Position numbers and translations under genes: made by a program
The notes under the pieces: generated by a model
The model's input: the letters and a program-made list of their open reading frames with translations, nothing else
The model's database searches: none
What the model was told of the DNA's origin: nothing
Assembly (NCBI GenBank): GCA_010909165.1
Contig: MU008171.1
Location: forward strand, 868,001 to 932,000
Direction of reading: 5' to 3'
Source of the DNA: Anthoceros angustus
Lineage: Eukaryota; Plantae; Anthocerotophyta
Length of the DNA: 64,000 nucleotides
In this document: positions 2,976 through 46,290 of the stretch, piece after piece
Position numbering within the stretch: the stretch's first letter is position 1
How the letters are laid out: every line of letters starts with the position of its first letter

Positions 2976-3810
2976 ACGTGGTCGAGCTTGCTCCGCAACT
3001 GAGGGAGGAAGGATGATAGAGCAATCCCGCTGACAAAGGAGGAGGAAATCAAGGGATTGGCGCGGGGCGGGTCTGGAGCTTGCTTGTAACGCCTGCTGTG
3101 ACGCCCGAGGGTTCTTCTTTCCTTCACCTTTGATCCTGATAGTTGTGTTCCGAAATCGGAAGAGTGTTGAGTGGTAGGTTGGAAGCTTGTGTGTGCATCA
3201 AGAAAGAGGAGGAGAGAAAGAGAGAGAAGAGATCGGGCGAAGGGGAGGTCGAGCACTGTATGCGATGCGAGGTGTGAGATCGAAAGTGGAGTAAGGAGGA
3301 GAACAAATTGTGAAAGTTGACAGTGGGAAATTGATGTGAGTGGATTGTGAAACTCAAACCGGTGCTGGCAGTGGAAAGTGCACAAGGGAAACAGCATTCC
3401 TGATGGAAATCGTGTGGCGTGGCGCCTTTTTGTGTGTGGATGTGTGTGTGGAGCGGGTGTGGGGTGTCCTAGGAACTCCCGTTCCTAGAAATCGGTGAGC
3501 ATGAAGAGTGAAGTGTAGAATAAAACCTGATCCGGAAGCAGGGGTCGCGGCCCGTGACAGGGATCCGCGGCGCCGTGCGCCCGAATTAAGTCGCTAGGGT
3601 TTGGTGTGGGACCCACCTCGGTAGTCGTAGCAACCACTCCGAGGTGAGAACCGCTGTAGTAGCCCGGAACTGGTCTCGGAGTGGATTGGCGGTGTGGAAT
3701 AGATCCGGGGTAGTAGTAGAGAGGGTAGGAAGAGTAGCGATGGCAGGTGCAGTCCCAACTTGGGCAAAGGTCAGTAGTGATAGAAGTTAGCGTCTCTTGG
3801 CACAAACCAT

Positions 3811-4256
3811 TGTCATGTCATAGTCCTTACACATCGGGTAATTGCTAATTACAACTAAAGAGCATATAGATAAGCATGGTTGTTAGGTAGAGAGCCTGTT
3901 GTGATGAATAAGCAAATGCAGCTTATTCATAATTAGGGTTAGAAGACGTGTGTCGAAATCGCTGCACTCGACCATGGACGGAGGAGCAAGATGAGCATCA
4001 TGATGTGAATCGCATGCGCTGGAGCTTGGACCGACGATAAAAGCGCAGGAGAGCAAGGCGATAGGTGGTTGTTAGAGTCTTCGTGCGCAAGCTAGTTATG
4101 GTAGCCACAATGAATCACATCAACTTTTGAGACAATCTGAGTTTGCTGCTATGCTTGAGTCACCACTTGAAAGCGATCGCTGGCGTTGCTTGCTGTGACG
4201 ATGAACTGCCAACCCCAAACGAGACTCAGCTGAGAATCGTATTACAGAGACTCGTG
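3811..4256 (+). repeat. Terminal repeat X1 (matches 12865-13302)
   Basis: gtcatgtc(c)atagtccttacacatcgggtaattg ... gactc/cctcgtg is shared with X2 over ~440 bp. Confidence 0.92.
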
Positions 4257-4295
4257 TTGTGATCCGATCCTTTGTTTTGTTTCGACCTACCTTTT

Positions 4296-4311
4296 ACTCT
4301 AACAACCACCT
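4296..4311 (+). promoter_or_regulatory. Candidate self-priming site: exact reverse complement of 4063-4078
   Basis: ACTCTAACAACCACCT (4296-4311) pairs with AGGTGGTTGTTAGAGT (4063-4078), which lies ~27 bp downstream of a TATA-like GATAAAAG (4036-4043). No convincing TGG-type tRNA PBS follows X1. Confidence 0.5.
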
Positions 4312-4959
4312 CGCACTGAGAGGGAGGCTAATTACGTGGTTTGTTTCCCGGTGGAGTTTGGCGCTGGTGTTTCGCGAGGACGGCATTGCTGGTTGACGCT
4401 TGATCAACTCGATCCCGGTTGCCCAGCGGCGGTGTCGAAATACGACTTACTTCGAATCTTCTGGTCAGGTGCTTGGATCGACTGCTGGTTGCATGTTGGA
4501 CTGAGGTTGATGTACTCTAGGGATTGAGCACTAGAGCTTACGGTGCTTGACACTTCCTTGGAGAGAAAGCTGAATTGTCTGAAAACCGAATTGGCCGTTC
4601 TGGAGGCGATGAGCCGAATCTTGATCGGCTGTTGAATTAGAGCACAAGGTTGAGCCGCCTCTGCTGAATTCGACACTTGGCACACTTGGTGATGCATGTT
4701 GATGAGGGAGTGGGGAATCGCACCGCTTGAGATCGAGAGTGGTGAGATCGCCGCCGACGGAGGAATTTTCACAGACGAGCGACAATTGTTGTGAAGCCTG
4801 GGTTGCAAGCTATTGAGGCAAGTGCAGTCTGCGGGAGAGCTCACTTCTAATCAGAGGGATTATGCGCTCGACTTGGTGATGCCGGTTGGTCTCCATTCTC
4901 GCTATTTTGCAAGAAGAAGAGGCTTGTGGACGATCACAGAGTCTAGTGGATCAGACGAC

Positions 4960-5920
4960 ATGGCCGAGCCAGGGTCATCGACATCCAGGGCAGAAAAGTT
5001 CTCGGGCAGACCTGGTACTCAGACTCTGCGTGATTTCAAGCTTTACTTCAATTTTCTAACCAGCCGGGTCAAGTTCAAACATGGCGCAGCCTTTACAATC
5101 GGTATATGTTTGAGCAACTCCCGGATACATGGCTGATGAAGCTTTGGATCTGTATGAGGCTCATTGTGAGAGACTGCTGAGTAGCACGCTTGCACCTAAT
5201 CCGCCTTTCGAAGCTTTGCGTGGCAATGCTTGTATGCTTTCAGCTGTTGCCACATCGTCGGGTATTGCCGGGACTATTTCTCCTACTAACCACCTACGGT
5301 GATTACCATGACGCCTCAAGAGAGGGCTGGCTATGGGGATTGCTGAAGTTATGGAGGTGCGCATGTGTTAATCTGTGAGGAGTTCTTCATCATCTTGGAG
5401 AAAGCTTTTCCATTCAAGACACGAGAAGATAGCGAGCTTGCCGCCTTCACTCTAAGAAAGGAGAGACGGTTCAGATGGATGGCCGAGGTCAAAAGTTACG
5501 GAAGGGACAGAATGCTTACGGATCGTGAGGTCGCATGTAAGTTTCTTAGTGCTTTGGAGACGAGCGTTGTTCCACTTTCGCTTGTTTACATCTTTAGTGG
5601 ATAAATACGGGACCAATATATGCTTGATCAAGTCTTCCAGAAGCGTAACGGAAGGCGGCATTCTCAGCATATGCTTATAAGCATACTAAGTCTTATGCAC
5701 ATTACCAACATATGTTTGCTAGCAAGAGTGTTGTGCTAGCTTGGTACATCTAAGCGTAACTCATGTGTTGAAGCCTAAGCTCGCCAAGGCGTTTCCAGAT
5801 CACTTTTTCACCCATCCGAATCATGGGGGAGTCTGAGCATCTCGCCAACAAGTGCTCTTGAGGCACTTTATTGCACACATTGCCACAAGACGGACATGTA
5901 GTTACCGCTTGTTTTTTCGT
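4960..5920 (+). pseudogene. gag: Ty3/gypsy gag (frameshifted) with CCHC zinc knuckle
   Basis: ATG 4960 MAEPGSSTSRAEKFSGRPGTQTLRDFK. Knuckle C-T-H-C-H-K-T-x-H-V-V-T-A-C at ~5874-5913. Confidence 0.7.
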
Positions 5921-7960
5921 AAACATCTTGAACGTCGTTATCAAAAGCATGGAGGTGGAGAAGCCGAGGTTGTCACTTCCACTCGCGCAACAGTGCACGG
6001 GCCGCCTTCACTGCTAGTCTGAAGGCCCCACTAAGAGCAAGCTTCGACGTGAGAAGGAGAAACGCAAAATTGCGGCCTCGAGAAGATGTCGACTTGAGAC
6101 GCCATGTCGGCCTCACTACTCGATGAGTGTGTTGACAAAGTTTGGCGCTAAGCCCCGGGCGATTGAGCTAATGCCTGTGATGCGGTGAGGAAGAAGACTA
6201 TGGAAGTCCTGTCCTGGTGTGTGCAGTACAGAAGATGCCAGAGGCATCCGAGGTGGTTACCGTAGTCGCACACAAGCGGACAACGGTGTTGCCCAAGCCA
6301 GCTACACGAATGCAGGCTGCCAGAGCTGTGATGCCACAATCTTTCGTTCCTTTGCCGCTAGGGACAGCTGCTTCATTGAGAGGGGCAGATCACCTGCCAC
6401 TTACAAACGAGCTGGAGGAACATAGCTCGAAGCCACAGGAGATGTTACACTTGGCTTCAACTTCGTGGCGGAAGGGAGACCTTGTTCAAAAGCTGATTCA
6501 CGCTCCATTATTCACTTTGGATGAGCTGGGGGTGGGATTGACTCAGGTTCATTCCATGCTTCAAGACGTGTTGGCCCCACGGCTGGCTCTAGAGAAGTCG
6601 GTCATGATGCCGATGTGCTAATGTGTTATCTTGTCAACCTCCGTAATCAACATGGGTTGACCAATTGACATCGCCCGGGCTGATGGCTTCCAGCTAAAAC
6701 ATGTCAAGGGCATCCGATGGTACAGCCTACCAATCGGTTGCAGATGCTGGTTAATCACACATTAGTGGATAATCGTGAAGGCCATGTCACTGTCAATGGA
6801 GTCGCTCCTAGAGTCGTTCTGTTAGACACAGGGGCCCAACCTGTCATCATAGGGCAAACATTGGCTGCTAGACTGCAGCTCATGGGCTCTGCTCTCAAGA
6901 GCTCAACCTGGAATATTCGTATCGCAATCCGTTGAGGCACTTTATTGCACACATTGCCACAAGGCCAGGACATGTAGTTCGTTTGTTTTGAAACATCTGA
7001 GCGTCGTTATCAAAAGCATGGAGGTGGAGAAGCCGAGGTTGTCACTTCCACTGCGCAGCGGTGCAGCTGCGTCTTGAGACTCTGTTAGTGCAGGCGGCTC
7101 CCACTAAGAGCAAGCTCGACGTGAGAAGGAGCAAAAGTGCGGTGGTCTTGAGAAGATGTCGGCAGGCGCCATGTCGGCTCTCACTACTCAGATGAGTGTG
7201 TTGACAGCAAGTTTGGCGGCTAAGCCAGCCGGGGCAGTTGAGCTAATATCTGTTCAGGACAGCGGTGAGGAAGAAGACTATGGAAGTCCTGTCCAGGTGT
7301 GTGCAGTGCAGAAGATGCCAGAGGCATCCGAGGTGGTTACCATAGCCGCAGCACACAAGCGGACAACGGTGTTGCCCAAGCCAGCTACGAATGCGGTGCC
7401 CGGTGATGCCACAATCTTTCGTTCCTTTGCCGCTAGACAGCTTCATTGAGAGGGGCAGATCACCGCCACTTACAAATGAGTGGAGGAACATAGCTCGAAG
7501 CCACGGAGATGTTACACTTGGCTTCAACCGTGGCGGAAGGAGACCTTGTTCAAAAGGCGATTCACGCTCCATTATTCACTTTGGATGAGCTGGGGTGGGA
7601 TTGACTCGAGTTCATTCCATGCTTCAAGGCGTGTTGGCCCCACGGTGCTCAGTCGGTCATGATCTTTGTGATGCGGGCTAATGTGTTATCTTGTCAACCT
7701 CCGAATCAACATGGGTTGACCAATTGACATCGGCCCAAGGGCTGGCTTCCGATTAACAAACATGTCACGAGGCATCCGATGGTACTGACCTACCAATCGG
7801 TTCTGCGATCTTGATTAATCACACATTAGTGGATAATCGTGAAGGCCATGTCATCCTGGAGTTGCTCCTAGAGTCGTTACATTGACACAGGGCCCAACCG
7901 TCATCATAGGGCAAACATTGGCTGCTGCAACTCATGGGCTCTCAAGAGCTCAACTGGAAT
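5858..7960 (+). repeat. Tandem duplication of the gag knuckle-to-protease segment, unit ~1.07 kb
   Basis: ttgaggcactttattgcacacattgccacaag occurs at ~5858 and ~6932. The protease DTG region is present twice (~6826, ~7883). Confidence 0.85.
6717..6935 (+). CDS. Retroviral-type aspartic protease (pol segment)
   Basis: RVVLLDTGAQPVIIG motif. Confidence 0.8.
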   Translation: MVQPTNRLQMLVNHTLVDNREGHVTVNGVAPRVVLLDTGAQPVIIGQTLAARLQLMGSALKSSTWNIRIAIR

Positions 7961-8555
7961 ATCGTCTGGCGGGGCCGTTGAGCCGGTCGAGGAGAAACAA
8001 TTTATCCCGTAGTTATTGCTTTACGACCGGGTTCTGCCGATGCTGTCACCATGGAGGTACACTGTCTCGTTTCCGCAGCCACCAGCTATGACATTCGCCG
8101 GGCGAGTTCATGTTTCTCCTGTAGTAGATAATCGGACAATAAAGCTTTATCTACCGACCGGGCGTGGAGGGCGCTGGCCTACATTCCTTGATCTTCATCA
8201 CCGCACTGCTGATGCCCATGTGATGACGGTGAGGCACGTTTGTGCAGCTCGGATCTAGCCAGTTTTGCCTAAGGATGACAGCCGGGTATCCTGGCTCTTT
8301 GAAGAGGAAGGCGAAGCACTCTCAAATACTGTGGTCGCCGATGAAGCATTGACTGCCAGCTTTTCAGCTACAATCCCTGAGGTTTTGAAGCCTGATGCAA
8401 CTTGGATGGATGCAGCTCGGGCTCATGTCATTTTTGCCATGGAACAATTTCACAAGGGGGCGGGTGCTGACGATAGCACACTGCCGATTGTAGTTATGCA
8501 TTCGGCATTGGAGCCACTTCACCGACAAGCGATTCGTGGACTACCCTTGTGATGG

Positions 8556-9450
8556 ATGTGTGTTGGTGGAGCTTTTGCGTGCATTGCTCGGTTGGAGGTA
8601 GCATTACGGCTGCCTATCAAAAAGTATATCTATCGTGATGTTGCTCACAGCGATAGCCATCTTCCGCTACAGCTTGAACAATTTCCAGCACTTTTGTCTC
8701 AGGATGCTTTCACCGCTTTGCCTCAAGACATTTTGCTGGTTCAGCCTTGTCACATTCGCCAATTAGCACATGTGGACCTGGTAGTGGCTGGCTGGGAATG
8801 TCAGGGTTTTTCTAGAGCTGGTGGAGGCGCTGGTTTGCAACACCCAGGAACTGGACTGTTTACTTCATTGGTTCAAGTGATGAGATGGATTCAGAATGCA
8901 TATCCCAGGGCTCTTTATGTGTTCGAAAATACGCCAGCTCATTTAGACCCGCGAGCTCAAGTTAAGCAGGATGCTGCTATCGTGCAGCATGTACTTGGAC
9001 CTCCTTTTGTTATGGACGCTGCACAAGTTGGCAGCTATGCTCATCGTTTGAGGAGTTATTGGACCAATTGGGCCCCTACAGCAGTGCTTCAACTGGCCTT
9101 GCGACATACCCAGAATCCTCGCCACCGCAGGATGTGCTTGACCCCAAGCATGTTCCGCGACCACTGCGTGGCCCGGAGCGAGCTCCTTGGTTCCCTACCA
9201 ATCACGTGGGTGAGCCGCGTCGTACGTTGCCTACACTGGTTAGTTTTTCTCCATCCTATGCGTATAGGGGGAATGGTCCAGGTTTGTTATTCAACACAGA
9301 TACTCACTGTTGGGAGGAGCCGTCCATCGCAGAGCGTGAACGCATCATGGGGTTTTCAACTCATGCCACTGCGGCTGCTGGGGTTTCTATTTCTGAACGT
9401 TGTGCTGCTGTTGGGCGAGCTATGGACTTGTTTGCTCTCACCTGGTTAGT
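8556..9450 (+). CDS. DNA (cytosine-5)-methyltransferase catalytic domain, DNMT3-like, embedded in pol (frameshifted in this sequence)
   Basis: Motif I remnant VLVEL(F)xG..GLEVALR (~8558-8610). Motif IV DLVVAGWECQGFSRAG (Cys codon 8799-8801). Motif VI YVFENT (8916-8933). Motif VIII DAAQVGSYAHRLRSYWTN (~9014-9068). Motifs IX/X ERERIMGF...VGRAMD (~9330-9428). All are in canonical order. Confidence 0.9.
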
Positions 9451-9649
9451 GAGCATTTGTCTCATGTTTCAAGTCTTGGCTCGACCGAATTTTTGTGGCA
9501 TGGCGAACAGGAGCCTTCCTAATCGCTATCCGATGCTACACTTGCCTTTTCCCTTGGATCAGACTTTTCAGACGGTAGGGGAACATGCAGCATGGAAACC
9601 CAAGCTCGCTTTTTCGGCTGAAGCTGATGCTGCTGATCCATTGTCGGCA

Positions 9650-12480
9650 GCTTCTGCTGATCGCCCTTCTATTGAGACTTTTCCGTGGTGCATGGGTCCG
9701 CAGTTGACTAACGATCAGCGGCAACGAATGATACGGTTGTTGGTTCGGTACCAGGACTGTTTTGCTTTTTCGATGAAAGAGCTGGAGTCCTGCAATGTTA
9801 TGCAGTTTCGCATTCCTTTGACCTCTTCTGAGCCTATCTATCGGCGTCGGTATCGGTTAAGTCCCGCAGAATGGGCTATTGTGGATGCTGTTGCCGAGAA
9901 GCGTATGAAATTTGGTCTTATCTGACCTTCTACATCGATTATCTGCAGCCGGTTTTGCCACCAAAGAAGGAGCGGCCGAGTGTGGATGGAGAAGCGTATG
10001 TGCGGTGACTATCGGCCCATTAACGCATCACTTTCAAGATCGTTATCCTATGCCTACGCCAAGAACTGCTCACCAAATAGAATGATGCATATTTTTCGGC
10101 TGGATTTACGTCAAGGGTTCAATCAAGTTCCTATTGCGGAAGAGGATATCAAGAAGACAGCATTTCACGGCTCTCAACAGCTGTGGGAATGGCTGTTTAT
10201 GCCTTTTGGGTTCCGTAATGCACCAGTGATTTTCCAACGTATTATGGACAAGGTATTGTCCGGTGCTGCACATCTACTCTGTTACATTGACAATGTGTTG
10301 GTGCATAGCAAGGATTTTGAGTTGCATCTTGTGCACTTGGAAGACTGTTCTGCAGGTTGCGGCTTCGGTTCGTTGCCACCCACCAAATGTGAACTAGGCA
10401 TGGACACTGTAGCATATTTGGGACATCGCATCGTTCCTAATGGCATTATGCCTCATGCTGCTAAGGTTCAGGCCTATTCTGGAGGTGGCTGAACCTACTA
10501 ATTTGTCTTCTTTACGCGCATATTTAGGACTGTGCAATTATTACAGAGTCTACATACAAGATTTCAGTAGCATTGCTAAGCCTTTGAATCAGTTGTTGCG
10601 CAAGGATGTGACATGGGACTGGACAGAGGCCTGCCAAAAGGCATTCGAGATGCTAAAAACAAAACTTACAGAATTACCAGTTATGGCTTTCGTTCTTCAT
10701 ACTGATTGGAGTCAACTCGGGCTTGGTGCTGTGTTGGCTCAGGTAGATGATGCAGGCCATGAACGAGTTATTGCATATGCTTCACGCAGTAACAATCGAG
10801 CTGAGTCTAACTATCCCAGCTATGAGGGAGAGTGTTTAGCTGCAGTTTGGGGGGTCTGTCATTTTAGGCCGTACCTCTATGGCAAGCGCTTTACATTGGT
10901 TACAGATCATCAGCCACTTAAGTGGCTGATGACGAACAATACTTTGAGTGGTAAGGTGGCTCGGTGGGCGATGACGCTGCAAGATTACGACTTTGAAGTG
11001 GTACACCGGCCTGGAAGTTGTCATCAGAATGCTGATCTGTTGTCACGTCATCCTATGGCCAGCAGCGAGGATCTCACAGAGGCTAGGCAAGACCATGAAG
11101 ATGATGTGGTGGCTACATCTGTTGCAGCCATGTTGGTCGCACTTTGTGAGATCAAGACCACACATGCTACTATTCGGCATGCTCCAAGTCGGGATATCTG
11201 GGAAGATGAGGCAACCATGCGATACTTGCAGACTGGGCTGTATCCCACCGGTTGTCCTATTGATCAGCAAGACCGCATCAAGCACCGTGCTTCCAGGTAT
11301 TACTGGCGGGATGGATATCTGGTGAGAAAATTAGTCTCTGGAGCTCAGCGTTTGGTGCCACCTCCTCAGGATCGGGTAGCCTTAGTCATGCGAGCTCACG
11401 CTGATTTGGGGCATTTTGGCATCAAGCGGACATACAGTCTGCTGGTACCTCATTTTCATTGGTACGGCATGTATGGTCAAGTGCGAGATGTGGTAGCATG
11501 TTGTGAGCAATGCGATCGGGTCAAGGCATCTTTCAGCATCAAGCCATCACATTTGCAACCACTACCTATCATGGGACTGTTCTTTAGGTGGTCTTGTGAC
11601 CTTATTGGGGAGTTGCCACGCACACCACGGGGAAATGTTTATGTCATGGTGATGGTCGAACACTTCTCTAAGTGGGCTGAGATCGTTGCATTGCTTGACA
11701 AGACTTCCAGAAGTACGTCTCAAGCTTTCCTGCAGCATGTGTTAGGCAGGTTTGGTAGTTGTGCAGAATGCTTGATGGACCAGGGTTCTGAGTTCCGAGG
11801 AGAATTTCAGGATTTGCTGGATTCGGCATTCATTGATCATCGGTGGACCAGCAGGGACCATCCACAGGCTGATGGACTTGCTGAGCGTTTGGTTCAAACG
11901 ATCAAACAAGGATTGAGGAAGTTACTTTTGCAGATGCCCAAGAGTGATTGGGACCTGGCGTTGCCATACGTGGCTATGGGCTATCGCATGAGTAAACATG
12001 CTTCTTTGGCACATTTTTCACCATATTTTTTACTCTTTGGTCGTGATCCAGTGCCACCAGTGGCTATTGCTAAGGATATGCAACAGGTGGTAGACCTGGA
12101 CAATCCCGCTGTATGGGCTAAGGTGGTTGGTGAACGTGCTGCTTTATTTCAGAGCTATGCCCATGGCTATGGCCAATCTCAGAATTGCACAGCATAGGGA
12201 TTCGCTTCGTTATGCTTACACACGTAGTGGCAATTTTCGGCCCAAGCTACGCAAATTTCATGTGGGAGATTATGTGTATCTGCAGCGACAGACAACCGAT
12301 ACATTGGAGACGTCAGCTAATCGCTATGTGCTGCGCATCAAGGAAATACTTGATAGTGGTATTCTGGTGCTTCAGGGTAAGGATGGGCGCACTCTGAAAG
12401 ATCACATGACCAATTGCGCACCTTGCCATTTGCCAAATCTAGATTCCACAATTGTGACTGCAAACTGGATCCCGCCAAGT
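9650..12480 (+). CDS. pol: Ty3/gypsy pol: reverse transcriptase, RNase H, integrase (frameshifted)
   Basis: RT: RMCGDYRPIN, LDLRQGFNQVPI, MPFGFRNAPVIFQR, YIDN. RNase H: LHTDWS..LGAVLAQ, YEGECLAAVWGV, TDHQPL. Integrase: H-x4-H/C-x2-C, WSCDL, DQGSEF, GLAER; GPY/F-like FHVGDYVYL. Confidence 0.95.
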
Positions 12481-12489
12481 GATTACCCA

Positions 12490-12624
12490 TGCCAACTTTG
12501 TCAACGTATAGATGACCCAGAGCTGATGCTGCTGTGCGATGGTTGCAATGGCGGATTCCACTTATTTTGCCTCACTCCTCCACTGACAGATGTGCCGGAA
12601 GGGCTGTGGTATTGTCCTCGGTGA
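12490..12624 (+). CDS. PHD finger at the integrase C-terminus
   Basis: CQLCQRIDDPELMLLCDGCNGGFHLFCLTPPLTDVPEGLWYCPR fits C4HC3. The position of the last Cys reads TGA (stop or 1-bp indel). Confidence 0.92.
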   Translation, partial: CQLCQRIDDPELMLLCDGCNGGFHLFCLTPPLTDVPEGLWYCPR

Positions 12625-12694
12625 GGCTTGCCCGGTGGGCCTAGTGACTAATCGTGGGTAGTCAAGCACAATCTTTGGGCTCAATCTTTGGGGG

Positions 12695-12862
12695 ATGATG
12701 TAGACTTGCTTTTCTCTTGGGATGCCAACATTGAGCTCCATTTTATGTGAGAATTGGTTGAAGATCGGTGTGTGTCTGTTGAACTAGCATGATAGTATTC
12801 CCAGAATCAATGTGACAAGAGTGTAGAGGTGAGAGTTTTGGTCAACTGGTTGTTTTCCACGA
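12695..12862 (+). repeat. Repeat Y1 (matches 13303-13480), preceded by the purine run GGGGG (PPT-like, 12690-12694)
   Basis: atgatgtagacttgctttt ... ggttgttttccacga is present twice. Confidence 0.92.
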
Positions 12863-12864
12863 TA

Positions 12865-13302
12865 GTCATGTCCATAGTCCTTACACATCGGGTAATTGCC
12901 AATTACAATGAAAGCATATAGATAAGCATGGTTGTTAGGTAGAGCTTCTGTGATGAATAAGCAAATGACTTATTCACAATTAGGGTTAGAAGACGTGTAG
13001 TCAGAAATCGCTGCACTCAGTCATGGACGTGGGAGCGGGAAGCAAGATGAGCGATCATGATGTGATCGCATGCGCGGGAGCTTGGACCGACGATAAAAGC
13101 GCAGGAGAGCAAGGCGATAGGTGGTTGTTAGAGTCTTCGCGTTGCGCAATGTAGTTATGGTAGCCACAATGAATCACATCAACTTTTGAGACAATCCGAG
13201 TTCTTGCTATGCTTGAGTCACCACTTGAAAGCGATCTGCGTTTCCGACGATGAACGCCAACCCCAAACGAGACTCACCGAGAATCGGTTTGTAGACCTCG
13301 TG
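12865..13302 (+). repeat. Repeat X2 (matches 3811-4256)
   Basis: Direct sequence match to X1. Confidence 0.92.
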
Positions 13303-13480
13303 ATGATGTAGACTTGCTTTTTCCCTTGAGATGCCAACATTGAGTTCCATTTTATGTGAGAATTGGTTGAAGACTGGCTGAAGTGTGCTGTTGAACTAGC
13401 ATGATAGTATTCCTGCAGAACTGTTGTATGACAAGAGTGTAGAGGTGAGGGTTTTGGTCAGCTGGTTGTTTTCCACGACA
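13303..13480 (+). repeat. Repeat Y2, forming the right terminus (...TTCCACGACA)
   Basis: Direct match to Y1. Ends in CA followed by CCAT. Confidence 0.92.
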
Positions 13481-13559
13481 CCATTCCCTTGGGAGCAAAT
13501 CCTAGGACTACAACGACATTGAGGGTGAATGTGGACCTCATGGAGGACTTGATGAAGAT

Positions 13560-16500
13560 GAAGAACGTGCCCTGCATCACACTTGAATACAACTGAACCG
13601 ACACCTGCTATGGGTAGGTTGTGATCATCTCAGGATGATCGATGTCCTGGTGGTGAGTAAGACTCAAAAGAGTTTGTTGTAACAAATATGTGAAGTAGCT
13701 CCACTGCCTAAGTACCATGAGGTATTGGAGGGCTTGGAAGAAGCCAAGCACACAGTGAGCACTGGAGTTGAGGAAGATTGTTTCTTCACGCAATGTTAGC
13801 TCCTGTGGGGCCTCCTCCGAGGTTCCCATTCTTCTTCACGACAATCCTTTTCCATGTGATTTGGGATTCGCACCAATTACATATAATCCCATCTTGTTAC
13901 CTCTTGCGGTGTTGAAGAAGATGCCTCCATCATGGAAAGTATGCGTGATATGGGGTCGGAAAGTAGAACCTCGGCCTCCCGTCTCTTCCTCTACCTTTGT
14001 GAATACATCACCGCCGCTTGTTGGAGGAGGTGATGATGCTGCCTCCTCCTCGTAGCAATGCTCCAATAAGTTCGAAACACGATGTCCGGCTCTTCATTTG
14101 GATCTTCATCGCCTTTTCCGACATTACAATTTTGAGTTGTAATGAAAGCCCTATAAGAAGGTGGCAATGAAGATAAGAGAATGACGTAAGCCTCCATCTC
14201 GAGATAGGTACGCTTGAAGATTCCAAATGGGATCGTGCCAATCAAAATGCATTAACATGATGTTCGATGGTGTGGACTCCTTCATTGAGAGGTTGCGGAA
14301 GTTACGTGAAGCAACAATACTCATTACATCTCGAGATGAATATAATTGAGCAAGGTGAGTCCACATATCCTTGGAGGTCTTTGCGCAGCGACATGTCTCA
14401 CCATATGTTGAGAAAGTCCACCGACCAATAAATCTTGTGCCTTCTCCCGCGGCCCTGTGAAGGTTGAAGTTCACGTTCAAATCGGGCGTGTGGCCTTGGA
14501 ATTGATCCATCGACGATGCCCCAAAGGTCTCTTTGCCGCAAAGCTCCTCGCATTCTCAATGACCGATGTCATAATCCCTTCCATTGAATCATCTTTCTTT
14601 GAATCACCATAATGATAATGCAATGAAGTGTTAGCATTATCATTACCCAATGGGGAATTAGGAATGCTTTGTTCTTCATCATTGATCACTCCAGCCATTG
14701 TAGGTGATTTAGAGGACTAGGCCTCACGATGCCTCTCATCTTCTCTATTGCATGCAAACTCTTCTCTTGCATCATAATCGATTCGGATGATGATAGCATG
14801 CTCTCAAATCTCGCATTATCAACCTTAGAGAGAATAGACAATTTTGTCCTTAATTCAGATAATTCTCCTTAAGATCAAAGGATTGGATTCTAAGAGTTGC
14901 TAATTGACTATCAATTTCTTGAAATCTAAGAGTTTCTATGCTATTTTGTCTTGAGACTAGAAGATAAAGGAGTACTAATACCAGATTCAAATTTGGGATA
15001 TGTTGGAGAGCTAATTCTAATGCCTTGACGTGAATTGAAAAAACTTCTAGCAAATCACGCCTAGCTAGCTTGATAAACTTCCTTGATCCGTTTAGAAATT
15101 AAAATAGATGCAATAAAGTTTGCTATACAAGAGGAGGTTTCTTCTATCTCTCCTCTATAGCTTGTTGTCTTCTATTGCTTCTATGTTGGACTCCTAATTT
15201 GTTCTTGTTGTCTTGCAGACTACTCTCTTCTTAACTCTATGCCTCTCCTTCTAAGGGAACACAAATCCATGGAGGAAGGACAAAGAATTAGTGCATAAAA
15301 GCATTGTTAGAAGAGAAAGATTAGCATAAAAGAATGCATGCAAAGATAGCAATTCTAGGATAAACACAATCCATCTAGGCAAAAACACAATCCATCTAGG
15401 CAAATGCTAGATTAGAAAGTGTCTCCTAGATAAGCTACTTAGATGCATGAGGATGACAAGCAAACAAAGAGCACGTGGTGCTCGGATACTACATGATGAG
15501 AATCATACACAAGCTCGCCAACTCAGAGCTGCATGTGTTGGGCTCCTAATTTGTTCTTGTTGTCTTGACTACTTCTCTTCTTAACTCTATGCCTTCTCCT
15601 TCTAAGGGAACACAAATCCATGGAGGAAGACAAAGAATTAGTGCATAAAAGCATTGTTAGAAGAGAAATGTTAGCATAAAAGAATGCATGCAAAGATAGC
15701 AATTCTAGGATAAACACAATCCATCTAGGCAAATGCTAGATTAGAAAGTGTCTCCTAGATAAGCTACTTAGATGCATGAGGATGCAAGCAAACAAAGAGC
15801 AAGTGTGCTCGATACCATGATGAGAATCATACACAAGCTCTAGCAATATGTGTTGCATTACATTCATAATAGAAAGTACATGCCTTTATGTAGGCAAGGT
15901 AGTTGTAACCAATAAGTGGTTGTAATAACTAACCAATTAAATAACTACTAAAGAAACTACCTAGAGCCCTAAGGACTAAATTAATTATTAAGTCCTAGGT
16001 GCCCTAGTGAAGAGTGCCCTAATAGTAAGCTATTTTATGAAGTCCAACAACTCATTGTGAGTCGCTGCATCATTTCATGGATAGCCTCCTTCCCAGCACT
16101 ACCTGCAGTTAGAATTGTATAAGCATGGTGGCCCGTGCCCAGAAGCACTCTGCTGAAGCACCTTGCTAATGGCCCACTGGTAGCCCATACCACCGGCTCT
16201 CCAAGGCCCAACGCATTGCTCTTTTGCCTCGTGGACTGGACTTTCCGCTGTTGCTCCGGTGTATACTGTGATTGTGGAAGAAGGATATGAGGGAGAAACG
16301 AAAAGTGACGTGGACTGAAGACCCAGCTGTACAAGTCGAGAGGAAGCAGCCTCGAAAGGGCCCTCAGTGGCAAGCATGGTCAAGATAGTACACCGCCTGT
16401 GGGGGTCGAGATCACCGGGAAGTTGTGGCTGCATTCCAAGACGGAAATAGCAACCTCAAGAGACCTTCTTCATGTACCATAGTAGAGGTGGCAGCCAGCC

Positions 16501-17640
16501 GTAGAAGCAATGGACAAAGGTATAAGGCTCCCTCCCAAGACACCTCCAACATCCTTGAGCTCCTCAAGATCACGCCTCAAAATGTGTCTTGAGTGAGTTG
16601 TATACTACTTCTCTTCTTAACTCTATGCCTTCTCCTTCTAAGGAACACAAATCCATGGAGGAAGGACAAAGAATTAGTGCATAAAAGCATTGTTAGAAGA
16701 GAAATGTTAGCATAAAAGAATGCATGCAAAGATAGCAATTCTAGGATAAACACAATCCATCTAGGCAAATGCTAGATTAGAAAGTGTCTCCTAGATAAGC
16801 TAGTTAGATGCATGAGGATGCACAAGCAAACAAAGAGCACGTGTGCTCTGATACCATGATGAGAATCATACACAAGCTCAAGCAATATGTGTTGCATTGA
16901 TTCATAATAGAAAGTACATACATTTATATAGGCAAGGTTGTTGTAACCGTTAAGTGGTTGTAATAACTAACCAATTAAATAACTACTAGAAGAAACTACT
17001 TAGTGCCCTAAGGACTAAATTAATTATTAAGTTCTAGGTGTCCTAGTGAAGAGTGCCCTAATAGTAAGCTATTTTATGAAGTCCACCAACATTGTGAGTC
17101 AGTGCATCATTTCATGGATAGCTCCTCCTTCCGGCACTACTGTGTTAGAATTGTATGGTGGCATTTGCCCAGGCCTAGAAGCACTCTGCTGAATGGGTCA
17201 TGGTTACCGCTATGCCCATGTAGCCCACTGCTCCAAGGCCCAACGCATTGGCCGCTTTTGCCTCGTGCCAGCAGCGATTTCCTGCTGCTCCTGTATACCT
17301 GTGGATTGTGGAAGAAGGATATGAGGGAGAAACGAAAAGTGACGAAGGACCCAGCTGGTGGCCAAGGTCACCATGTCGAGGAAGCAGCCCGAAAGGGCCC
17401 TAGTGGGCGATGGCAAGATAGTACCGCCTGTGGGTCGACACCGGGTAGTTGTGGCCGATTCCAAGACGGAATAGCAACTCAAGAGACCTTCATGTACCTG
17501 AGTAGAGGGTGGAAGACTCCGTAGAAGCAATGGACAAAGGCCCCTCCCAAGACACCTCCAACATCCTTGAGCTCCTCAAGATCACGCCTCAAAATGGTCT
17601 TAGTGAGTTGTCTACTTCTGGCCAATGGGAGCGCATACAA
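13560..17640 (-). mobile_element. Truncated Ty1/copia element (5' LTR, PBS, gag with CCHC)
   Basis: Reverse-complement tRNA-Met PBS (gctctgatacca, ~16846-16857). gag fragments KTSKDMWTHLAQLY and VILLSSLPPSYRAF. CNWC...HMEKDC knuckle at ~13840-13890. Confidence 0.75.
15190..17620. repeat. Tandem duplication of the copia LTR/PBS/leader block (two ~1.05 kb copies plus one partial)
   Basis: catgatgagaatcatacacaagctc occurs at ~15492, ~15817 and ~16855. ORFs 15523-15732 and 16577-16768 are near-identical. Confidence 0.85.
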
Positions 17641-21899: not shown

Positions 21900-24800
21900 A
21901 CCTCCAAACTTTGTAGGTCCCATCCACCTTAGAAATGTAACTTACCGAAAATGCATGTATTTGCTATCATACAATAAGCCGTGTCCCTGTGAACAACATA
22001 CTGGCGCCTACCGCTTATCATGCCATTCCTTCCTCCTCTCGTCAACATCCCGCATAACTTGTAGCCTGCTCTCCTCCCAGGTGTCATTTAATCCAACCAA
22101 CCTCCAATTGGCTTTCCTCCACAGATTCACTTGTTTCGATCAGGGTGGGTTAATCTATTGGCATGACGGGTGAGTGTCCATGTAAGGTAATACGGGTTCG
22201 GTGGTTGTCACCTTTTCCGCTGTTCGATGCCCAAAGTGCGTCAATGCGCTTCATATCCTATATGCATAATCGATTGAGCTTGGTTAGATCTTGCACAACA
22301 AGCCATTTGTTTTCGTCACCCATTGGCCTTTGGGTTGTGGGAGTGGACTCATGAGCAACGTTGAAGTGCTGGTCATATTAGAGATTACCCGATTGACGAA
22401 ATGCGGCCTCTATCACCAGCTCCAATGGGCGCCCATATCTAGGTGATGATTTGCTCAAAGAATCGCCACCACGCCGCCGAATCCACTCTAGCTTGGCGCC
22501 CACCATCCGAGAATTGTGGCTACCAGGATGTATTGGTTTTGTGTCTTGGTTTTAATGGATGGGCCCGACAAAATCGATCCCCATTTCTAATGGTGCCGCA
22601 AGTATGGGGACAAGGGCCAGGTTGTTGGCTTGTCGACTCTTTGGCAAGCCGGCCACACGACTCCTTGGCATCCTTGTACCAGGCCACCAATAGCCTCCAA
22701 TTTTCCCCGAAGTGACATGCGCTGCATAATGGCCCGCCTCCTCCTCGTGTAATGAGCTCAGACTGGCTTGCTGATTGGTGTGCCCATAACCGCCTCCCCG
22801 CCATCGGACCTACCTGATAAGTCTGCAGTGCCGGTAAGTGGTCTTGAGTAGGACTAGCTCGCTTGCTTGAAAGATGTGGAGGAATTTGGCCCGCGTGATA
22901 ATCATAGATCTCCGATATGTTGGTCGAAACCTCCTCCCTTCTCAATCGATGGCTCTCCACCCTTATTTCCTTCCGAATCGGTCTTCATCGTTTTTCGAAA
23001 CAAAATGTCTCATCGGAAAATCATCTTCCCGTTTCGCTCCACCGGCCCCTGCTTTCAAGCGGATATGAAGTCGGTATGACATGCTTCCCGCTCTCGCTCT
23101 CATCGTGAAGAAAACTCAAGCAAGAGATCCAACGCTATCCGTCGAAAGGTCGTTTATTCACAAGGTGTTTCAAGGCAAAGTGATCAACGTGGAAACACAA
23201 ATCATATGAGAGGAGGTAGTGTCCAATTTCCGACCGAGTAAATCATTCCCTGCTGCTTCGCCTCCGTGGTGGTATACTGCTCAAGGCCTCGCTAGTTGTC
23301 CGCCATAGTAGATCGGGAAATCCTTCTTCTTCTCATCCTACTGCTAAGGATCACCACTGCAAATGTCAAAACATCAACGAAAACGTGGAATTTCTTACTC
23401 GCCTCTTAGCGTGAGCTCGTGGGCGCAGTCTTGAATGCTTCGCTCCATCGCCCATTCCCACCCCGGTCCTTCCTCAACAAGCTCGTTAGTGGGGCACCCG
23501 CAAAATTTGGGACGAAAACGTCCTGTAATACCCGACCATTCCTGTGAACCCACCTGAGTTCTTTAGTTGTTGGCGCCTAAGGGTGGCTATGACCTTTACC
23601 TTGTCCGGATCGACCTTCTATGCCTCCGCTTGAACCATGCCCCAACAATCCCTTCCGACATGCCAAAGTAGCACTTTTTGGGATGCAGGCATAATTGCGT
23701 GGTTCGACACCGCCCTGCAGACACTTTCGAGGTGCGACAAATGGTCCTTGATAGCCCAACACGCAAGTCGCCCAAGAAAACTTCCATAAAGTCCCTAAGG
23801 AAGTCCTTGAAGATCTTGACATGGTTCGCATGAAAGGACCCAGTGCCCTGTTAACCCAATGCGCTCGCCAGGGTAGGCATTCCCCAAATTACAAAGCCAC
23901 AATGCCAATCGCTTTCCCTAAGGTGCAGCTGGTTATAACCAGAGTACCCATCTAAGAATGAATACGACCATCCTGCCTGCGACCAGATCTAGGATATTAT
24001 CGATGAAGGGCAACGGAAAGTGATCCTTCTTGGTGACTTTATTCAACCTCCGCCAGTCCTGGCAGACCCGGATTTTGCCCGGCTGTCTCTTAGGTACTAC
24101 CACGATTGGAGCCACCCATTCGGTATTGACTATAGGATAGATCATCCGCCTTGAGATACAGCTCCAACTGATCCTTGACCTTGAGGGAGTTTTGATTTAA
24201 CTTGTCTGGAATCTCACCGGGATTGCTCCCGCCCGTGTCAATCCTATGTTCTCGCCCACTCCTTGGGAATACCCTTCATGTGGTTACTCAAGGCGAAAAC
24301 ATCGATGAATTCTCGCAAGCTGTTGCTTCATGCCTTCCAACGCAGATCCATTGTTCGGAGAATTTGAGTACTTTCCTCGGGAGAACCTCAACATCCTTGA
24401 CTTCATCCGCCTGTACTCCACTCACGCCCATCAGTCGATGCCAATCCTTCTTCTCGCTCCCGCTCCTCTTCTCTCATGCCCCACTCTAAACAGATCCTCC
24501 GAGGTGAAACGTGATGCCTGCTTTTCCTCCCATCCGCTGTTCCCGCTTTGCTTTTCCCCTCCCATGTAAGCGGCCTATGGTTACCCATAGCCCACCGATT
24601 GATCGTGGGCGAATCTCTCGCGATAATCCTGCTCTCGCCGACCATGAGATGTGTGCGAAAGGAAATTTGTCTTCTTGTTCCGCTTCCGACGTGTCTCTCC
24701 TGAGGTGTATCCTTCCGCTTGGGTTTCGCCAACAGACATGTCCTTACTCCAAAGTTAGCAAATCCTACCTTCCTGGTCTTGGATCCCATTCCGTGGTTTG

Positions 24801-26228: not shown

Positions 26229-28720
26229 ATGGCCAATCCTGCCCCTAATCCTACCTCCACGGTGATTAACACCACCAAAGTAGAATTTAGAGACTGCGAT
26301 CGCTTCACAGGAAGCGATTACGATATCTGGCAAATGAGAATAACAGCCCTGCTAGAGGCACATGATCTGATGTTAGTCACGGACGGCACCTCGCCACAGC
26401 CTTCTCTCACCTCTAATCCACCAGCTACTGCCGACCACATAGCCGCATGGAACAAGAAGGACAAGAGGGCTCGTAACATCCTAATATTTGCCATCGACAA
26501 AACAATGCTTCAGCACACCCAAGGTTAAACGACCTCACATGATGTGTGGAAGGCATTTAACGACATGTTCCAGGCACAAAGCTCGATGTCTCTTATAAAC
26601 GCCACAAGACAATTCTACTCCCTTAAGATGAGGGATGAGGCGTCGGCGGACGTAAATGTGTTGTCCCCTGCGAGCCAAGCTCTCGGCATTGATCAATGAG
26701 CCCGGCCCAGGTAGGAGCGGGCGAAACCGAAAGTAGAGAGCCCCGAGCTCGATACCATGAAGACAAGATATCCAAGAAAGAATGAATTTACTGATACACT
26801 GATACATGTCTTATACTTCTACATACTAAGCTAACGATAGTCGTTAAGTGTCTAAGTAACTTGATTAACTTAGCGAGCTATTATTTAAAACTGTTTATGG
26901 GCGAAACGTGCCCTAAAGCTAGGTCCTGATCTGACGGCGCCTAAACCCTATCGTTCGCTCCAACAACGAAGGCACTGAGTGGCGAGCCTCTATGGATCGA
27001 GAGTTCAACTCTCTTATTGCTAATAAAACTTGGACTCTCGTAGACCCTCCTCCTGGCAGAAGTATCGTGACCAGCAAATGGATATTAAAGAAGAAATATA
27101 ATGCTAGTGGAAGTCTTTCCAAGTACAAAGCCAGACTTGTCGCACGGGGTTTTACCCAAAAGGATGGCTTAGATTATCAAAAGGAAAGCACCTTCAGTCC
27201 AGTTGTGAAGCTTACCTCCCTTCGGATCATGCTTGCTCTCTCTGCCATCCACAACCTTCATGTACATCAAATGGATGTACAAACGGCCTTCCTGAATGGC
27301 GTCCTTCGAGAAGAAATCTATCTACAACAACCGGAGGGCTATATCAAATCTGGTGAAGCCCACAAAGTCTGCAAACTCCACAAGACCTTATACGGATAAA
27401 AACAATCGCCTCGTGGCTAGTATGAGAGATTGCAAATCTTTCTCCTTAGCAAGGGCGGCTTCATCAAGTCCTATGCAGATTCAAGTGTCTTCATAAGAAG
27501 ACAAGGTAACTCGTACCTTATATTGGGTCTTTATGTTGACGACCTTGTTCTTTGTTCCAATGACCTTGGCTTTCTCAACTTGATCAAAAGTGAACTCAGC
27601 AAGGAGTTTCTGATGACTGATAATGGGGTCATCAAGTTTCTACTTGGAGTACAGGTTATCATTAACGCAAATAGCATTAGTCTTCATCAAGAGAGGTACA
27701 TTATAGACATGCTAGAAAAGTATCAGATGTAGAATTGTAAACATGTTGACACCCCTATGCAAATTGGCGAAAGGCTACGTTCCTCTATGTGCCCAAGCAC
27801 TCCTGCAGAGATAGAAGAAATGAAGGGTATACCCTATAAAGGCAGTATACAGTACTTGGTTCAGAATGCCAGACTTGATGTTGCTTGTGCATGTAATCAC
27901 ATTGCTTAGTTTCAAGCCTCCCCTGGGAAGCCACATTGGGTGGCTGCAAAGCGCATCCTTCGATATCTTCAAAAGACAAAGACATCAGGCATCACTTATA
28001 CTGGTGGTGAGGGTGCATAAGACAAGCTTCTAGGATGGACAGACTCAGATTGGGCCGGTGATCCGGACTCTAGAAAGTCGACATCAGGTTATGTCTTCAC
28101 TCTTGCTGGCGGTGCTGTCAGTTGGAAGTCCAAGAAGCAAGCTTGTGTTGCTCAAAGCTCAGCAGAATCCGAGTATATTGTTGCAGCTGTTGCCGCTAAA
28201 GAAACCATTTGGCTTGTTCAACTCCTACAAGATCCCGGTTACCCTCACTCCGGGCCTGTTGAAATTAAGTGTGATAATCAGGCTGCCATCTCTCTTTCTC
28301 GAGATCAGCGATTTCATGATCGCTCTAAGCACATCGAATTGCGATATCATTATTTATGAGAGAAGGTGGAATCTCAACAGCTACTGCTCACTTATGTCCC
28401 GACATCGGAACAAGCTGCACATATTCTTACGAAGCCCGTGTCGCGCCCTATACTCGAGCCTTGCTGCGAGATGTTGGGCTTGTTCTCAATACCTTGAGAG
28501 CGATTATCCTTCCTAGGATTAAGGGGGTGTGTGAATACCATTAATTAGAGTTAGTTCTAACCTAGGTAGTTAATCCTAGTTAGGGTTCTCGCTTGAACCG
28601 TTACACCTTTTCTAAGAGGCACATCCTTGAACATTAAGGATACACCTACATTGTAAACAATCAATCAATTCTATTCAATCTTGATAGCTTTGTGTTCTCT
28701 GATCATGTAGTAACATTTCA
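26229..28720 (+). mobile_element. Internally deleted Ty1/copia (gag, RT, RNase H, PPT, 3' LTR ~28530-28720)
   Basis: gag FTGSDYDIWQMRITALLEAHDL. RT SKWILKKK..KYKARLVARGFTQ, HQMDVQTAFLNG, LYVDDL. RH DSDWAGD..SRKSTSGY. PPT aaggggg at 28521. Protease and integrase are absent. Confidence 0.9.
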
Positions 28721-46102: not shown

Positions 46103-46290
46103 CTCATGAATACGTATGCCAAGTTAAGTGTCTGTCCAGAAGTATGGTGAATGCACAGTGTCTTTGGCTCCTTGTCCCAGAGGAATGTTGTATGCTGGAA
46201 TGCCATATTTGTTAGGTACGATGAGCAAGAGCAGGGTGGCTTAAGGTTTAGGGCTGAATCAGCTGGTACGAAACCGGATGACTTCACATG
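46103..46290 (+). pseudogene. PLS-class pentatricopeptide repeat (PPR) gene fragment
   Basis: LMNTYAK...HSVFGSLSQRNVVCWNAI..Y.EQEQ...GTKPDDFT follows the MYAKCG/VF..RNVVSWNAMI/G.KPD..T consensus. Confidence 0.7.

What the first reader, a model, noticed from the sequence alone, without database searches (positions are those of the whole stretch)
8556..9925. Ty3/gypsy retrotransposon encoding its own DNA cytosine-5 methyltransferase inside pol
Seen: a full set of C5-MTase motifs (I, IV, VI, VIII, IX, X) lies between the protease and RT. ORF 9059-9925 carries motifs IX/X in the same frame as the RT N-terminus, so the MTase is part of the polyprotein rather than a neighbouring gene. Known: the motif VIII AHRxRxYWxN and the motif X context resemble DNMT3-type de novo enzymes. 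MTase-carrying retrotransposons have been reported in dinoflagellates and charophyte algae (de Mendoza et al. 2018, cited from memory; verify). Inference: a copy in an apparent land-plant genome could methylate its own cDNA inside the particle or its integration site. This could help it evade or co-opt host silencing and makes it a mobile source of de novo methylation.
Basis: partly seen in the sequence, partly recalled or inferred. Interest (0 to 1): 0.92.

Follow-up and report, generated by a model that had tools for sequence, protein, structure and literature searches.

The report
Dead methyltransferase-carrying Gypsy retrotransposon copy
This is a complete but broken copy of a plant jumping gene (Ty3/Gypsy type) that carries its own DNMT3-type DNA-methylating enzyme; papers describe this design for the alga Klebsormidium and dinoflagellates, and here I trace it to liverworts, including intact copies in the lab model Marchantia.

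Summary
Between protease and RT lies a C5-MTase domain (Pfam PF00145 just above cut-off; family profile E 9e-67 and 1e-44). Motifs IX/X share a frame with the RT N-terminus.

The element spans 3811-13480 and has a 4-bp target duplication (CCAT). Order: gag?-PR-MTase-RT-RNaseH-integrase-PHD, bounded by split direct repeats (A-internal-B-A-B).

This copy is dead: a stop in motif I, a frameshift inside the MTase, two more frameshifts and a stop in pol, and a tandem duplication through PR.

It is not a one-off capture. Klebsormidium nitens, Calypogeia fissa and Marchantia polymorpha carry the same domain order, repeat layout and termini (TGTCAYG...CACGACA). The Marchantia copy is intact, with 99-100% identical repeats. 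So did 39 of 46 related metagenome loci.

The domain is DNMT3-type by profile (DNMT3A E 9e-29; DRM2 1e-14) and by predicted fold. In two intact relatives its dN/dS is 0.16.

Catalytic activity is unproven. The Klebsormidium domain gave no methylation in yeast, and most family members have E-C, not P-C, in motif IV.

Verdict: a new member of a known kind (KnitGypsy-Dnmt3). I found no paper describing it in land plants. This scan had already met the family elsewhere in this genome (s1-253331, s1-267830, s1-300096, s1-258076).

The parts
3807..3810 (+). Left copy of the 4-bp target-site duplication, CCAT
   Evidence: Same 4 bases at 13481-13484. Liverwort copies also have 4-bp duplications: GGTT in Marchantia, AGTG in Calypogeia.
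3811..4256 (+). Repeat A1 (5' terminal repeat), starts TGTCATG
   Evidence: blastn 3806-4239 against 12859-13286, 88-90%. Alignment A1. 92.3% identity without gaps. The terminus is shared with Klebsormidium, Calypogeia and Marchantia.
4257..6700 (+). Decayed gag-like leader region; no zinc knuckle left
   Evidence: No Pfam hit. Only a weak match to the Calypogeia gag ORF at 4972-5094. No CCHC pattern, whereas Marchantia ORF1 has one.
5858..7965 (+). Internal tandem duplication (5858-6920 and 6932-7965) that splits the protease
   Evidence: blastn 85% over 1104 columns; 88.3% without gaps. PR profile positions 8-61 lie at 6762-6923 and positions 71-103 at 7997-8095.
6762..8095 (+). Aspartyl protease, in two pieces (6762-6923 and 7997-8095)
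   Evidence: Pfam gag-asp_proteas and Asp_protease_2 in ORF 6717-6935; family profile.
8505..9134 (+). DNMT3-type C5-MTase, motifs I-VIII; stop at 8553-8555 in motif I
   Evidence: tblastn to Calypogeia 47%, to Klebsormidium 42%.
9128..9493 (+). C5-MTase motifs IX-X, in the next frame (frameshift at about 9128-9134), same frame as the RT N-terminus
9674..10474 (+). Reverse transcriptase; in-frame stop at 9923-9925
   Evidence: Pfam RVT_1 E 4e-20. tblastn of Marchantia ORF2 aa 15-293. Translation.
10485..12152 (+). RNase H (10605-11009) and integrase (H2C2 zinc finger plus DDE core, 11340-11879); frameshift against RT at about 10474-10485
   Evidence: Pfam RT_RNaseH, Integrase_H2C2 and rve. Frames. 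Profile hits.
12136..12621 (+). C-terminal extension with PHD finger (12472-12621); a further frameshift at about 12136-12152
   Evidence: Pfam PHD E 1.6e-12. 70% identical to the Calypogeia tail. Frames.
12686..12693 (+). G-run just upstream of B1 (polypurine-tract-like)
   Evidence: ctttGGGG before B1 here. GGGGGG, GGGGGGGGG and GGGGGGG stand at the same place in Marchantia, Calypogeia and Klebsormidium. The function is inferred.
12694..12862 (+). Repeat B1
   Evidence: blastn against 13302-13478, 88.7%; alignment A2.
12865..13301 (+). Repeat A2
13302..13480 (+). Repeat B2 (3' end of the element), ends CACGACA
13481..13484 (+). Right copy of the target-site duplication, CCAT

Best explanation
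Window 3811-13480 is one old, dead, full-length insertion of a Ty3/Gypsy lineage. That lineage has carried a DNMT3-derived cytosine-5 methyltransferase domain between protease and reverse transcriptase since before Klebsormidium and land plants diverged. It also carries a PHD finger after the integrase and unusual split direct repeats (A-internal-B-A-B).

Shown:
- The domain order, and DNMT3 affinity by sequence and by fold.
- Integrase-type insertion: 4-bp duplication and TG...CA ends.
- Homology of the whole element, including its termini, with copies in Klebsormidium nitens, Calypogeia fissa and Marchantia polymorpha.
- Purifying selection on the MTase in intact relatives.
- Several disabling lesions in this copy.

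Inferred, for working copies:
- The MTase is translated as part of Gag-PR-MTase(-Pol). In the Marchantia sub-lineage a conserved in-frame stop after the MTase would make Gag-PR-MTase the abundant product and Pol a read-through product.
- The protease releases the MTase, which travels with the particle or the pre-integration complex.
- It methylates the element's own new DNA. The PHD finger steers the integrase to particular chromatin, the role a chromodomain plays in chromoviruses.

My odds are about even that the domain is a working DNA methyltransferase in vivo. The copy in the window does nothing.
For: - Domains and order.
- Family size: 710 hits, many of them 1,000-3,500-aa polyproteins. 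Intact single ORFs exist with gag-PR-MTase-RT-RH-IN (P0128) and with PHD added (P0299).
- Same order in Calypogeia fissa L002 and Klebsormidium nitens L003 and in Marchantia L084.
- 39 of 46 related metagenome loci with enough upstream DNA hold the MTase between PR and RT.
- DNMT3 type by profile against PDB: DNMT3A 9e-29, DNMT3B/3C about 1e-27, DRM2 1.5e-14, M.HhaI 5e-10.
- DNMT3 type by fold: an AlphaFold model of the intact relative L007 (pLDDT 88) has DNMT3A/B/C as all of its top 50 Foldseek hits, TM about 0.8 by target.
- Trees: window and Calypogeia are sisters in both the MTase tree (95*) and the RT-RH-IN tree (99*). They lie in a clade with Klebsormidium and Closterium (96*).
- Element ends: TSD CCAT, termini TGTCATG...CACGACA, and a G-run before B1 are shared from Klebsormidium to liverworts. 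The two liverworts and Klebsormidium also share a GC spacer between B1 and A2.
- Selection: dN/dS of the MTase between L005 and L007 is 0.16, PR 0.19, Pol 0.06. The catalytic Cys, the ENV Glu and RxR are invariant in 33 sequences.
- Lesions in this copy.
Against: - Activity was never shown for this family. The KnitGypsy-Dnmt3 domain gave no methylation in yeast (PMC5890265).
- About 70% of family members, including the window and Calypogeia, have Glu instead of the near-universal Pro before the catalytic Cys.
- CpG depletion of the element (observed/expected 0.72) does not differ from the window average (0.76).
- No sequencing run was listed, so expression could not be tested.
- The host species is not verified.
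- Neither tree has an outgroup, so the direction of change is open.
Confidence: 0.9

Rival explanations
1. The MTase-like domain of this family no longer methylates DNA. It is kept for a non-catalytic job: DNMT3L-like binding, or decoying or recruiting host DNMT3/DRM, or simple DNA or chromatin binding in the particle.
For: - Motif IV is E-C-Q, not P-C-Q or P-C-N, in about 70% of members.
- The Klebsormidium domain was inactive in yeast.
- DNMT3 enzymes work as oligomers with inactive partners (DNMT3L), as the structures found show.
Against: - The catalytic Cys, the motif VI Glu, the motif VIII RxR, motif I glycines and motif IX/X residues are invariant or nearly so across very divergent copies.
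- DNMT3L-type inactive relatives usually lose these residues (my own knowledge).
- A minority keeps P-C-Q, including Klebsormidium.
- The yeast result was inconclusive, because human DNMT3B also failed there.
Confidence: 0.2
2. One-off event: a host DNMT3 gene fragment was captured by, or mis-assembled into, this single Gypsy copy, or it sits there as an independent insertion.
For: The Pfam score is only marginal (23.6 against 22 bits), and the domain is frameshifted.
Against: - The same domain stands at the same place in Klebsormidium, Calypogeia and Marchantia, and in 39 of 46 related loci.
- Relatives have uninterrupted ORFs across PR-MTase-RT.
- The MTase and Pol trees agree.
- No repeats or duplication flank the MTase segment. 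The TSD flanks the whole element.
Confidence: 0.02
3. The land-plant copies came by horizontal transfer of the element (for example alga to bryophyte, or between bryophytes), not by vertical descent from the streptophyte ancestor.
For: - At least two distinct sub-lineages coexist in Calypogeia (L002 against P0024).
- Close relatives abound in environmental contigs of unknown hosts.
- Retrotransposon trees often disagree with host trees.
Against: - Divergence is deep: 42-47% amino-acid identity for the MTase between the window, Calypogeia and Klebsormidium.
- Window and liverwort group together, apart from the algae.
- No near-identical cross-phylum pairs were seen.
Confidence: 0.15

Closest known systems
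KnitGypsy-Dnmt3 of Klebsormidium nitens (de Mendoza et al. 2018, PMC5890265)
   Same: - A Gypsy pol with an intronless DNMT3-type domain.
- DIRS-like split repeats A-internal-B-A-B.
- In the K. nitens locus I fetched (L003): MTase-RT-RH-IN-PHD order, a G-run before B1, CACGACA-GC-TGTCACG at the B1/A2 junction and a CACGACA 3' end.
- Same MTase clade.
   Different: - The host is a land plant, not an alga.
- MTase identity is only about 40%.
- Motif IV is E-C-Q here and P-C-Q in K. nitens.
- This copy is dead.
SymbioDIRS-Dnmt3 of Symbiodinium (same paper)
   Same: A DNMT3-type domain inside a retrotransposon Pol, and split direct repeats.
   Different: - Those elements use a tyrosine recombinase; this one has a DDE integrase with a 4-bp TSD.
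- Their activity (de novo CG methylation) was shown in yeast; that of the Gypsy family was not.
Chromoviruses (chromodomain Ty3/Gypsy)
   Same: Ty3/Gypsy elements with a chromatin-reader module fused to the C-terminus of the integrase.
   Different: The element adds a DNA methyltransferase and lacks ordinary LTRs.
Animal DNMT3A/3B/3C and plant DNMT3/DRM
   Same: Catalytic-domain motifs in the normal order. Best sequence and fold match is DNMT3A/B/C.
   Different: - No ADD or PWWP domain.
- Not circularly permuted as DRM is.
- Glu replaces Pro in motif IV.
- About 100 extra residues in the target-recognition region.
EpiLTRs and DAM-LTRs (bioRxiv 10.64898/2026.05.21.726589)
   Same: LTR retrotransposons that carry DNA methyltransferases together with a chromatin reader.
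   Different: Those carry adenine methyltransferases and a DNMT4-like domain with chromodomains. That paper lists 'streptophytes (Gypsy-DNMT3)' as a separate, earlier-known case.

Membership tests
Ty3/Gypsy (Metaviridae) retrotransposon | pol order PR-RT-RNase H-IN, with a DDE integrase carrying an H2C2 zinc finger | tested here: met
   Pfam RVT_1, RT_RNaseH, Integrase_H2C2, rve and Asp_protease, in that order.
Ty3/Gypsy (Metaviridae) retrotransposon | Short target-site duplication and TG...CA termini | tested here: met
   CCAT at 3807-3810 and at 13481-13484; ends TGTCATG...CACGACA.
Ty3/Gypsy (Metaviridae) retrotransposon | Two identical long terminal repeats flanking the internal region | tested here: not met
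   The repeats are split: A1-internal-B1-A2-B2. The same holds in Calypogeia and Marchantia; Klebsormidium shows the 3' B-A-B.
KnitGypsy-Dnmt3 lineage | A DNMT3-type domain inside the Gypsy pol ORF | tested here: met
   Motifs IX-X share an ORF with the RT N-terminus.
KnitGypsy-Dnmt3 lineage | DIRS-like repeat layout combined with Gypsy domains | tested here: met
   described in the legend of Fig. 4c of PMC5890265.
KnitGypsy-Dnmt3 lineage | Common descent with the K. nitens element (MTase and Pol) | tested here: met
   A 34-row MTase clade (SH-aLRT 96) holds the window, Calypogeia, Klebsormidium and Closterium. Termini and junction are shared. The trees are unrooted.
KnitGypsy-Dnmt3 lineage | MTase under purifying selection, with conserved key residues | tested here: inconclusive
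   At family level: dN/dS 0.16 between L005 and L007 and invariant catalytic residues. This copy has a stop and a frameshift.
DNMT3-type C5 DNA methyltransferase | Motifs I-X in canonical (unpermuted) order, with the closest profile match to DNMT3 | tested here: met
   DNMT3A 9e-29 against DRM2 1.5e-14 and M.HhaI 5e-10. Alignment.
DNMT3-type C5 DNA methyltransferase | DNMT3 catalytic-domain fold | tested here: met
   Tested on the intact relative L007, not on the broken window copy: pLDDT 88.4, and all top 50 PDB hits are DNMT3A/B/C.
DNMT3-type C5 DNA methyltransferase | Pro-Cys dipeptide in motif IV | tested here: not met
   W-E-C-Q in the window, in Calypogeia and in about 70% of the family; P-C-Q in about 20%, including K. 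nitens.
DNMT3-type C5 DNA methyltransferase | De novo cytosine methylation activity | not testable with these tools
   The only published test on this family (yeast) was negative but inconclusive.
DRM (domains rearranged methyltransferase) | Circular permutation of the motifs (VI-X before I-V) | tested here: not met
   The motif order is I, IV, VI, VIII, IX, X.
DIRS/Ngaro retrotransposons | A tyrosine recombinase instead of a DDE integrase | tested here: not met
   A DDE integrase (rve) is present, together with a 4-bp TSD.

The most novel reading that the evidence does not exclude
The family is alive in land plants, and its DNMT3 domain is a working enzyme. In the Marchantia sub-lineage a conserved stop codon places it at the end of the abundant Gag-PR-MTase protein, so it is packed into the particle and methylates the element's own cDNA or its integration site. 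That would make it a mobile de novo methylation source in bryophyte genomes. The unusual E-C motif IV would then be a functional variant of the universal P-C catalytic loop.
Probability: 0.25. Interest if true: 0.8.

Novelty: new member of a known kind. Interest (0 to 1): 0.5.

Why it matters
Retrotransposons that carry a cytosine methyltransferase overturn the usual picture of methylation as a host weapon against transposons. The Gypsy-Dnmt3 kind has been described only from one alga, and its activity could not be shown there.

The whole element, down to its termini, also exists in land plants. Intact copies with 99-100% identical repeats sit in Marchantia polymorpha, a genetically tractable model. 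That makes the open question testable: does the element methylate itself, and to what end?

The copy in this window adds little function. It is a clean, complete fossil with its target duplication, and it documents the family in a further (reportedly hornwort) genome.

Tried and rejected
- phmmer of the two window MTase pieces against PDB sequences found nothing useful. Only the family profile did.
- Rfam found nothing in the window.
- Ten long ORFs outside the element had no Pfam hit, so the host could not be named. The atlas search only says the lectin ORF is a streptophyte-type legume lectin.
- The look-up of sequencing runs listed no run. Expression and read support could therefore not be tested, and read laying was not used.
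- CpG depletion as a mark of self-methylation: the element (0.72) does not differ from the window as a whole (0.76) or from neighbouring repeats (0.50-0.64). I rejected it as evidence either way.
- I found no proven MTase-less close relatives to root the Pol tree, because the first protein search was limited to proteins of at most 1,023 aa. Gain versus loss, and which of the two domain orders came first, stay open.
- No tRNA-type primer binding site was evident after A1; I did not pursue it.
- I did not build a consensus or repaired copy. Natural intact copies make it unnecessary.
- Complex prediction was not used; no binding claim is made.
Full report
**Observation**

Three-frame translation and Pfam show a C5-MTase between an aspartyl protease and RT, RNase H, integrase and PHD. 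The Pfam hit is marginal (PF00145, 23.6 bits against a cut-off of 22). A profile of 33 relatives hits 8559-9134 (E 8.6e-67) and 9128-9493 (E 1.2e-44).

Motifs IV (AGWECQGFS), VI (FENT), VIII (AHRLRSYWTN), IX (ERERIMGF) and X (VGRAMD) are readable. Motif I is decayed and holds a stop at 8553-8555.

**Anatomy of the element**

blastn of the region against the window and alignments give repeats A (3811-4256 and 12865-13301) and B (12694-12862 and 13302-13480). The layout is A-internal-B-A-B.

The element starts TGTCATG and ends CACGACA. It is flanked by CCAT on both sides, so the whole unit was inserted by a DDE integrase.

Identity between the repeat copies is 92% for A and 88% for B, so the insertion is old.

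Lesions:
- a stop in motif I of the MTase;
- a frameshift at about 9128-9134, inside the MTase;
- a stop at 9923-9925 in RT;
- frameshifts at about 10474-10485 and about 12136-12152;
- a 1.07-kb tandem duplication (5858-6920 and 6932-7965) that splits the protease;
- a gag region with no zinc knuckle left.

**Not a one-off**

phmmer of the N-terminal MTase piece against 1.84 billion representatives finds 710 proteins, many of them polyproteins of 1,000-3,500 aa. Intact single ORFs exist with gag-PR-MTase-RT-RH-IN (P0128) and with PHD added (P0299).

The closest named RH-IN relatives come from Calypogeia fissa, Riccia sorocarpa, Klebsormidium nitens and Closterium.

I fetched loci from three named organisms:
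- C. fissa (L002) has PR-MTase-RT-RH-IN-PHD.
- K. nitens (L003) has the same order from MTase through PHD.
- Marchantia polymorpha (L084) has the full order and two intact ORFs. Its A repeats are 99.0% identical and its B repeats 100%.

At least ten annotated Marchantia 'hypothetical proteins' belong to the family.

In 80 related metagenome loci, 39 of the 46 with enough upstream DNA hold the MTase between PR and RT.

**Shared element ends**

Calypogeia and Marchantia have the A-internal-B-A-B layout and 4-bp target duplications. Klebsormidium, whose 5' end runs off its contig, shows the 3' B-A-B.

All three have TGTCAYG...CACGACA termini, a G-run just before B1 and a GC spacer between B1 and A2. 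The window shares the termini and the G-run; its B1/A2 junction is degraded (TA where the others have GC).

This matches the published description of KnitGypsy-Dnmt3: 'repeats as in DIRS, domains as in Gypsy'.

**Type of methyltransferase**

The family profile matches DNMT3A best (9e-29). DNMT3B and 3C score about 1e-27, DRM2 1.5e-14, M.HhaI 5e-10 and DNMT2 2e-7.

An AlphaFold model of the intact L007 domain (pLDDT 88.4) has only DNMT3A/B/C among its 50 best PDB matches. The motif order is unpermuted, so it is not DRM-like.

**Phylogeny**

In the MTase tree (136 rows) the window is sister to Calypogeia (SH-aLRT 95). Both lie in a 34-row clade (96) with Klebsormidium and Closterium, and nearly all elements of PR-MTase-RT order.

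A second, larger group has the order RT-RH-MTase-IN-PHD. Pfam confirms this order on P0138 and P0164, and the Monoraphidium protein P0321 belongs there. In the RT-RH-IN tree this second group is one clade (support 100). The window again joins Calypogeia L002 and the metagenome protein P0001 (99).

Both trees are unrooted.

**Selection and function**

Between the two intact relatives L005 and L007, dN/dS is 0.16 for the MTase, 0.19 for PR and 0.06 for Pol, with dS about 1.2. The catalytic Cys, the motif VI Glu and the RxR of motif VIII are invariant.

Three facts argue for caution:
- The family mostly has E-C where C5-MTases have P-C.
- The K. nitens domain was inactive in yeast, a result the authors called inconclusive.
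- CpG depletion of this copy is unremarkable.

In Marchantia, L005 and L007, one conserved in-frame stop separates Gag-PR-MTase from RT-RH-IN-PHD. I read this as programmed read-through; that is inference. The window copy and P0128/P0299 lack that stop.

**Host**

The window holds germin-like exons and a legume-lectin ORF and Copia fragments. Earlier notes of this scan call the genome a hornwort. I could not verify the species, and no sequencing run was listed.

**Literature**

The 2018 paper describes the kind in K. nitens. Later papers speak of 'streptophytes (Gypsy-DNMT3)' without describing land-plant copies. Six further searches found no such description.

**Earlier notes of this scan**

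The family was already reported on other DNA of this genome (s1-253331, s1-267830, s1-300096, s1-258076), including the Marchantia lead, which I re-tested and confirm.

**Verdict**

It belongs to a published kind and is dead in this copy. Its value lies in extending that kind to land plants and in pointing to a testable model.

Noticed in passing
window 17106-17186 (+): A short second fragment of the same MTase family (motif I region, ...PPSGTTVLELYGGICPGLEAL*), 3.6 kb downstream of the element. Family profile E 4e-4; tblastn to the Calypogeia ORF 46%.
   Followed up: partly
window 15279-17090: A repeat of about 1.04 kb present twice (blocks 15629-16051 and 16665-17090, 93-99% identical), AT-rich and of unknown nature.
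   Followed up: no
window 42184-47150 and 49261-50252: Several germin-like first exons (ADPDPLTDF...) on both strands, and a legume-lectin-domain ORF with a probable frameshift or intron. These are host plant genes.
   Followed up: partly
window 23656-24121 (-), 26992-27399 (+), 35481-35969 (+): Pieces of other retrotransposons: a distant Gypsy RT, and a Copia-like RT and integrase.
   Followed up: no
L084 11835-11837 (Marchantia); L007 5083-5085; L005 4661-4663: One conserved in-frame stop codon between the MTase and RT in otherwise intact elements, in a similar context (...D*Q.. / ..S*QQ). This suggests programmed read-through, with the MTase on the Gag-PR side.
   Followed up: partly
proteins P0134, P0138, P0164, P0321 and about 80 more: A second architecture of the same MTase in related PHD-Gypsy elements: RT-RNase H-MTase-IN-PHD. 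It is one clade in both trees and includes Monoraphidium neglectum. I did not find it described in the papers I searched.
   Followed up: partly
proteins P0206, P0225, P0247: A third arrangement, with the MTase directly after RT and no RNase H detected between them. These sit on long branches inside the PR-MTase-RT clade.
   Followed up: no
alignments A3/A4, motif IV: Glu replaces the near-universal Pro before the catalytic Cys in about 70% of this family. Pro is kept in about 20%, including K. nitens.
   Followed up: partly
L084 15246-15248; L002 12143-12146; L003 6105-6108; window 12862-12865: The B1/A2 junction reads ...CACGACA-GC-TGTCAYG... in Marchantia, Calypogeia and Klebsormidium. It looks like an end-to-end (circle-type) junction of the element's two termini, and a G-run precedes B1. 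The window's junction is degraded (...CACGA-TA-GTCATG...). This may bear on how the split repeats are regenerated.
   Followed up: partly
protein P0334: A eukaryotic MTase-Gypsy polyprotein is annotated in NCBI as coming from a 'Minisyncoccia bacterium' MAG. This is probably a binning error.
   Followed up: no
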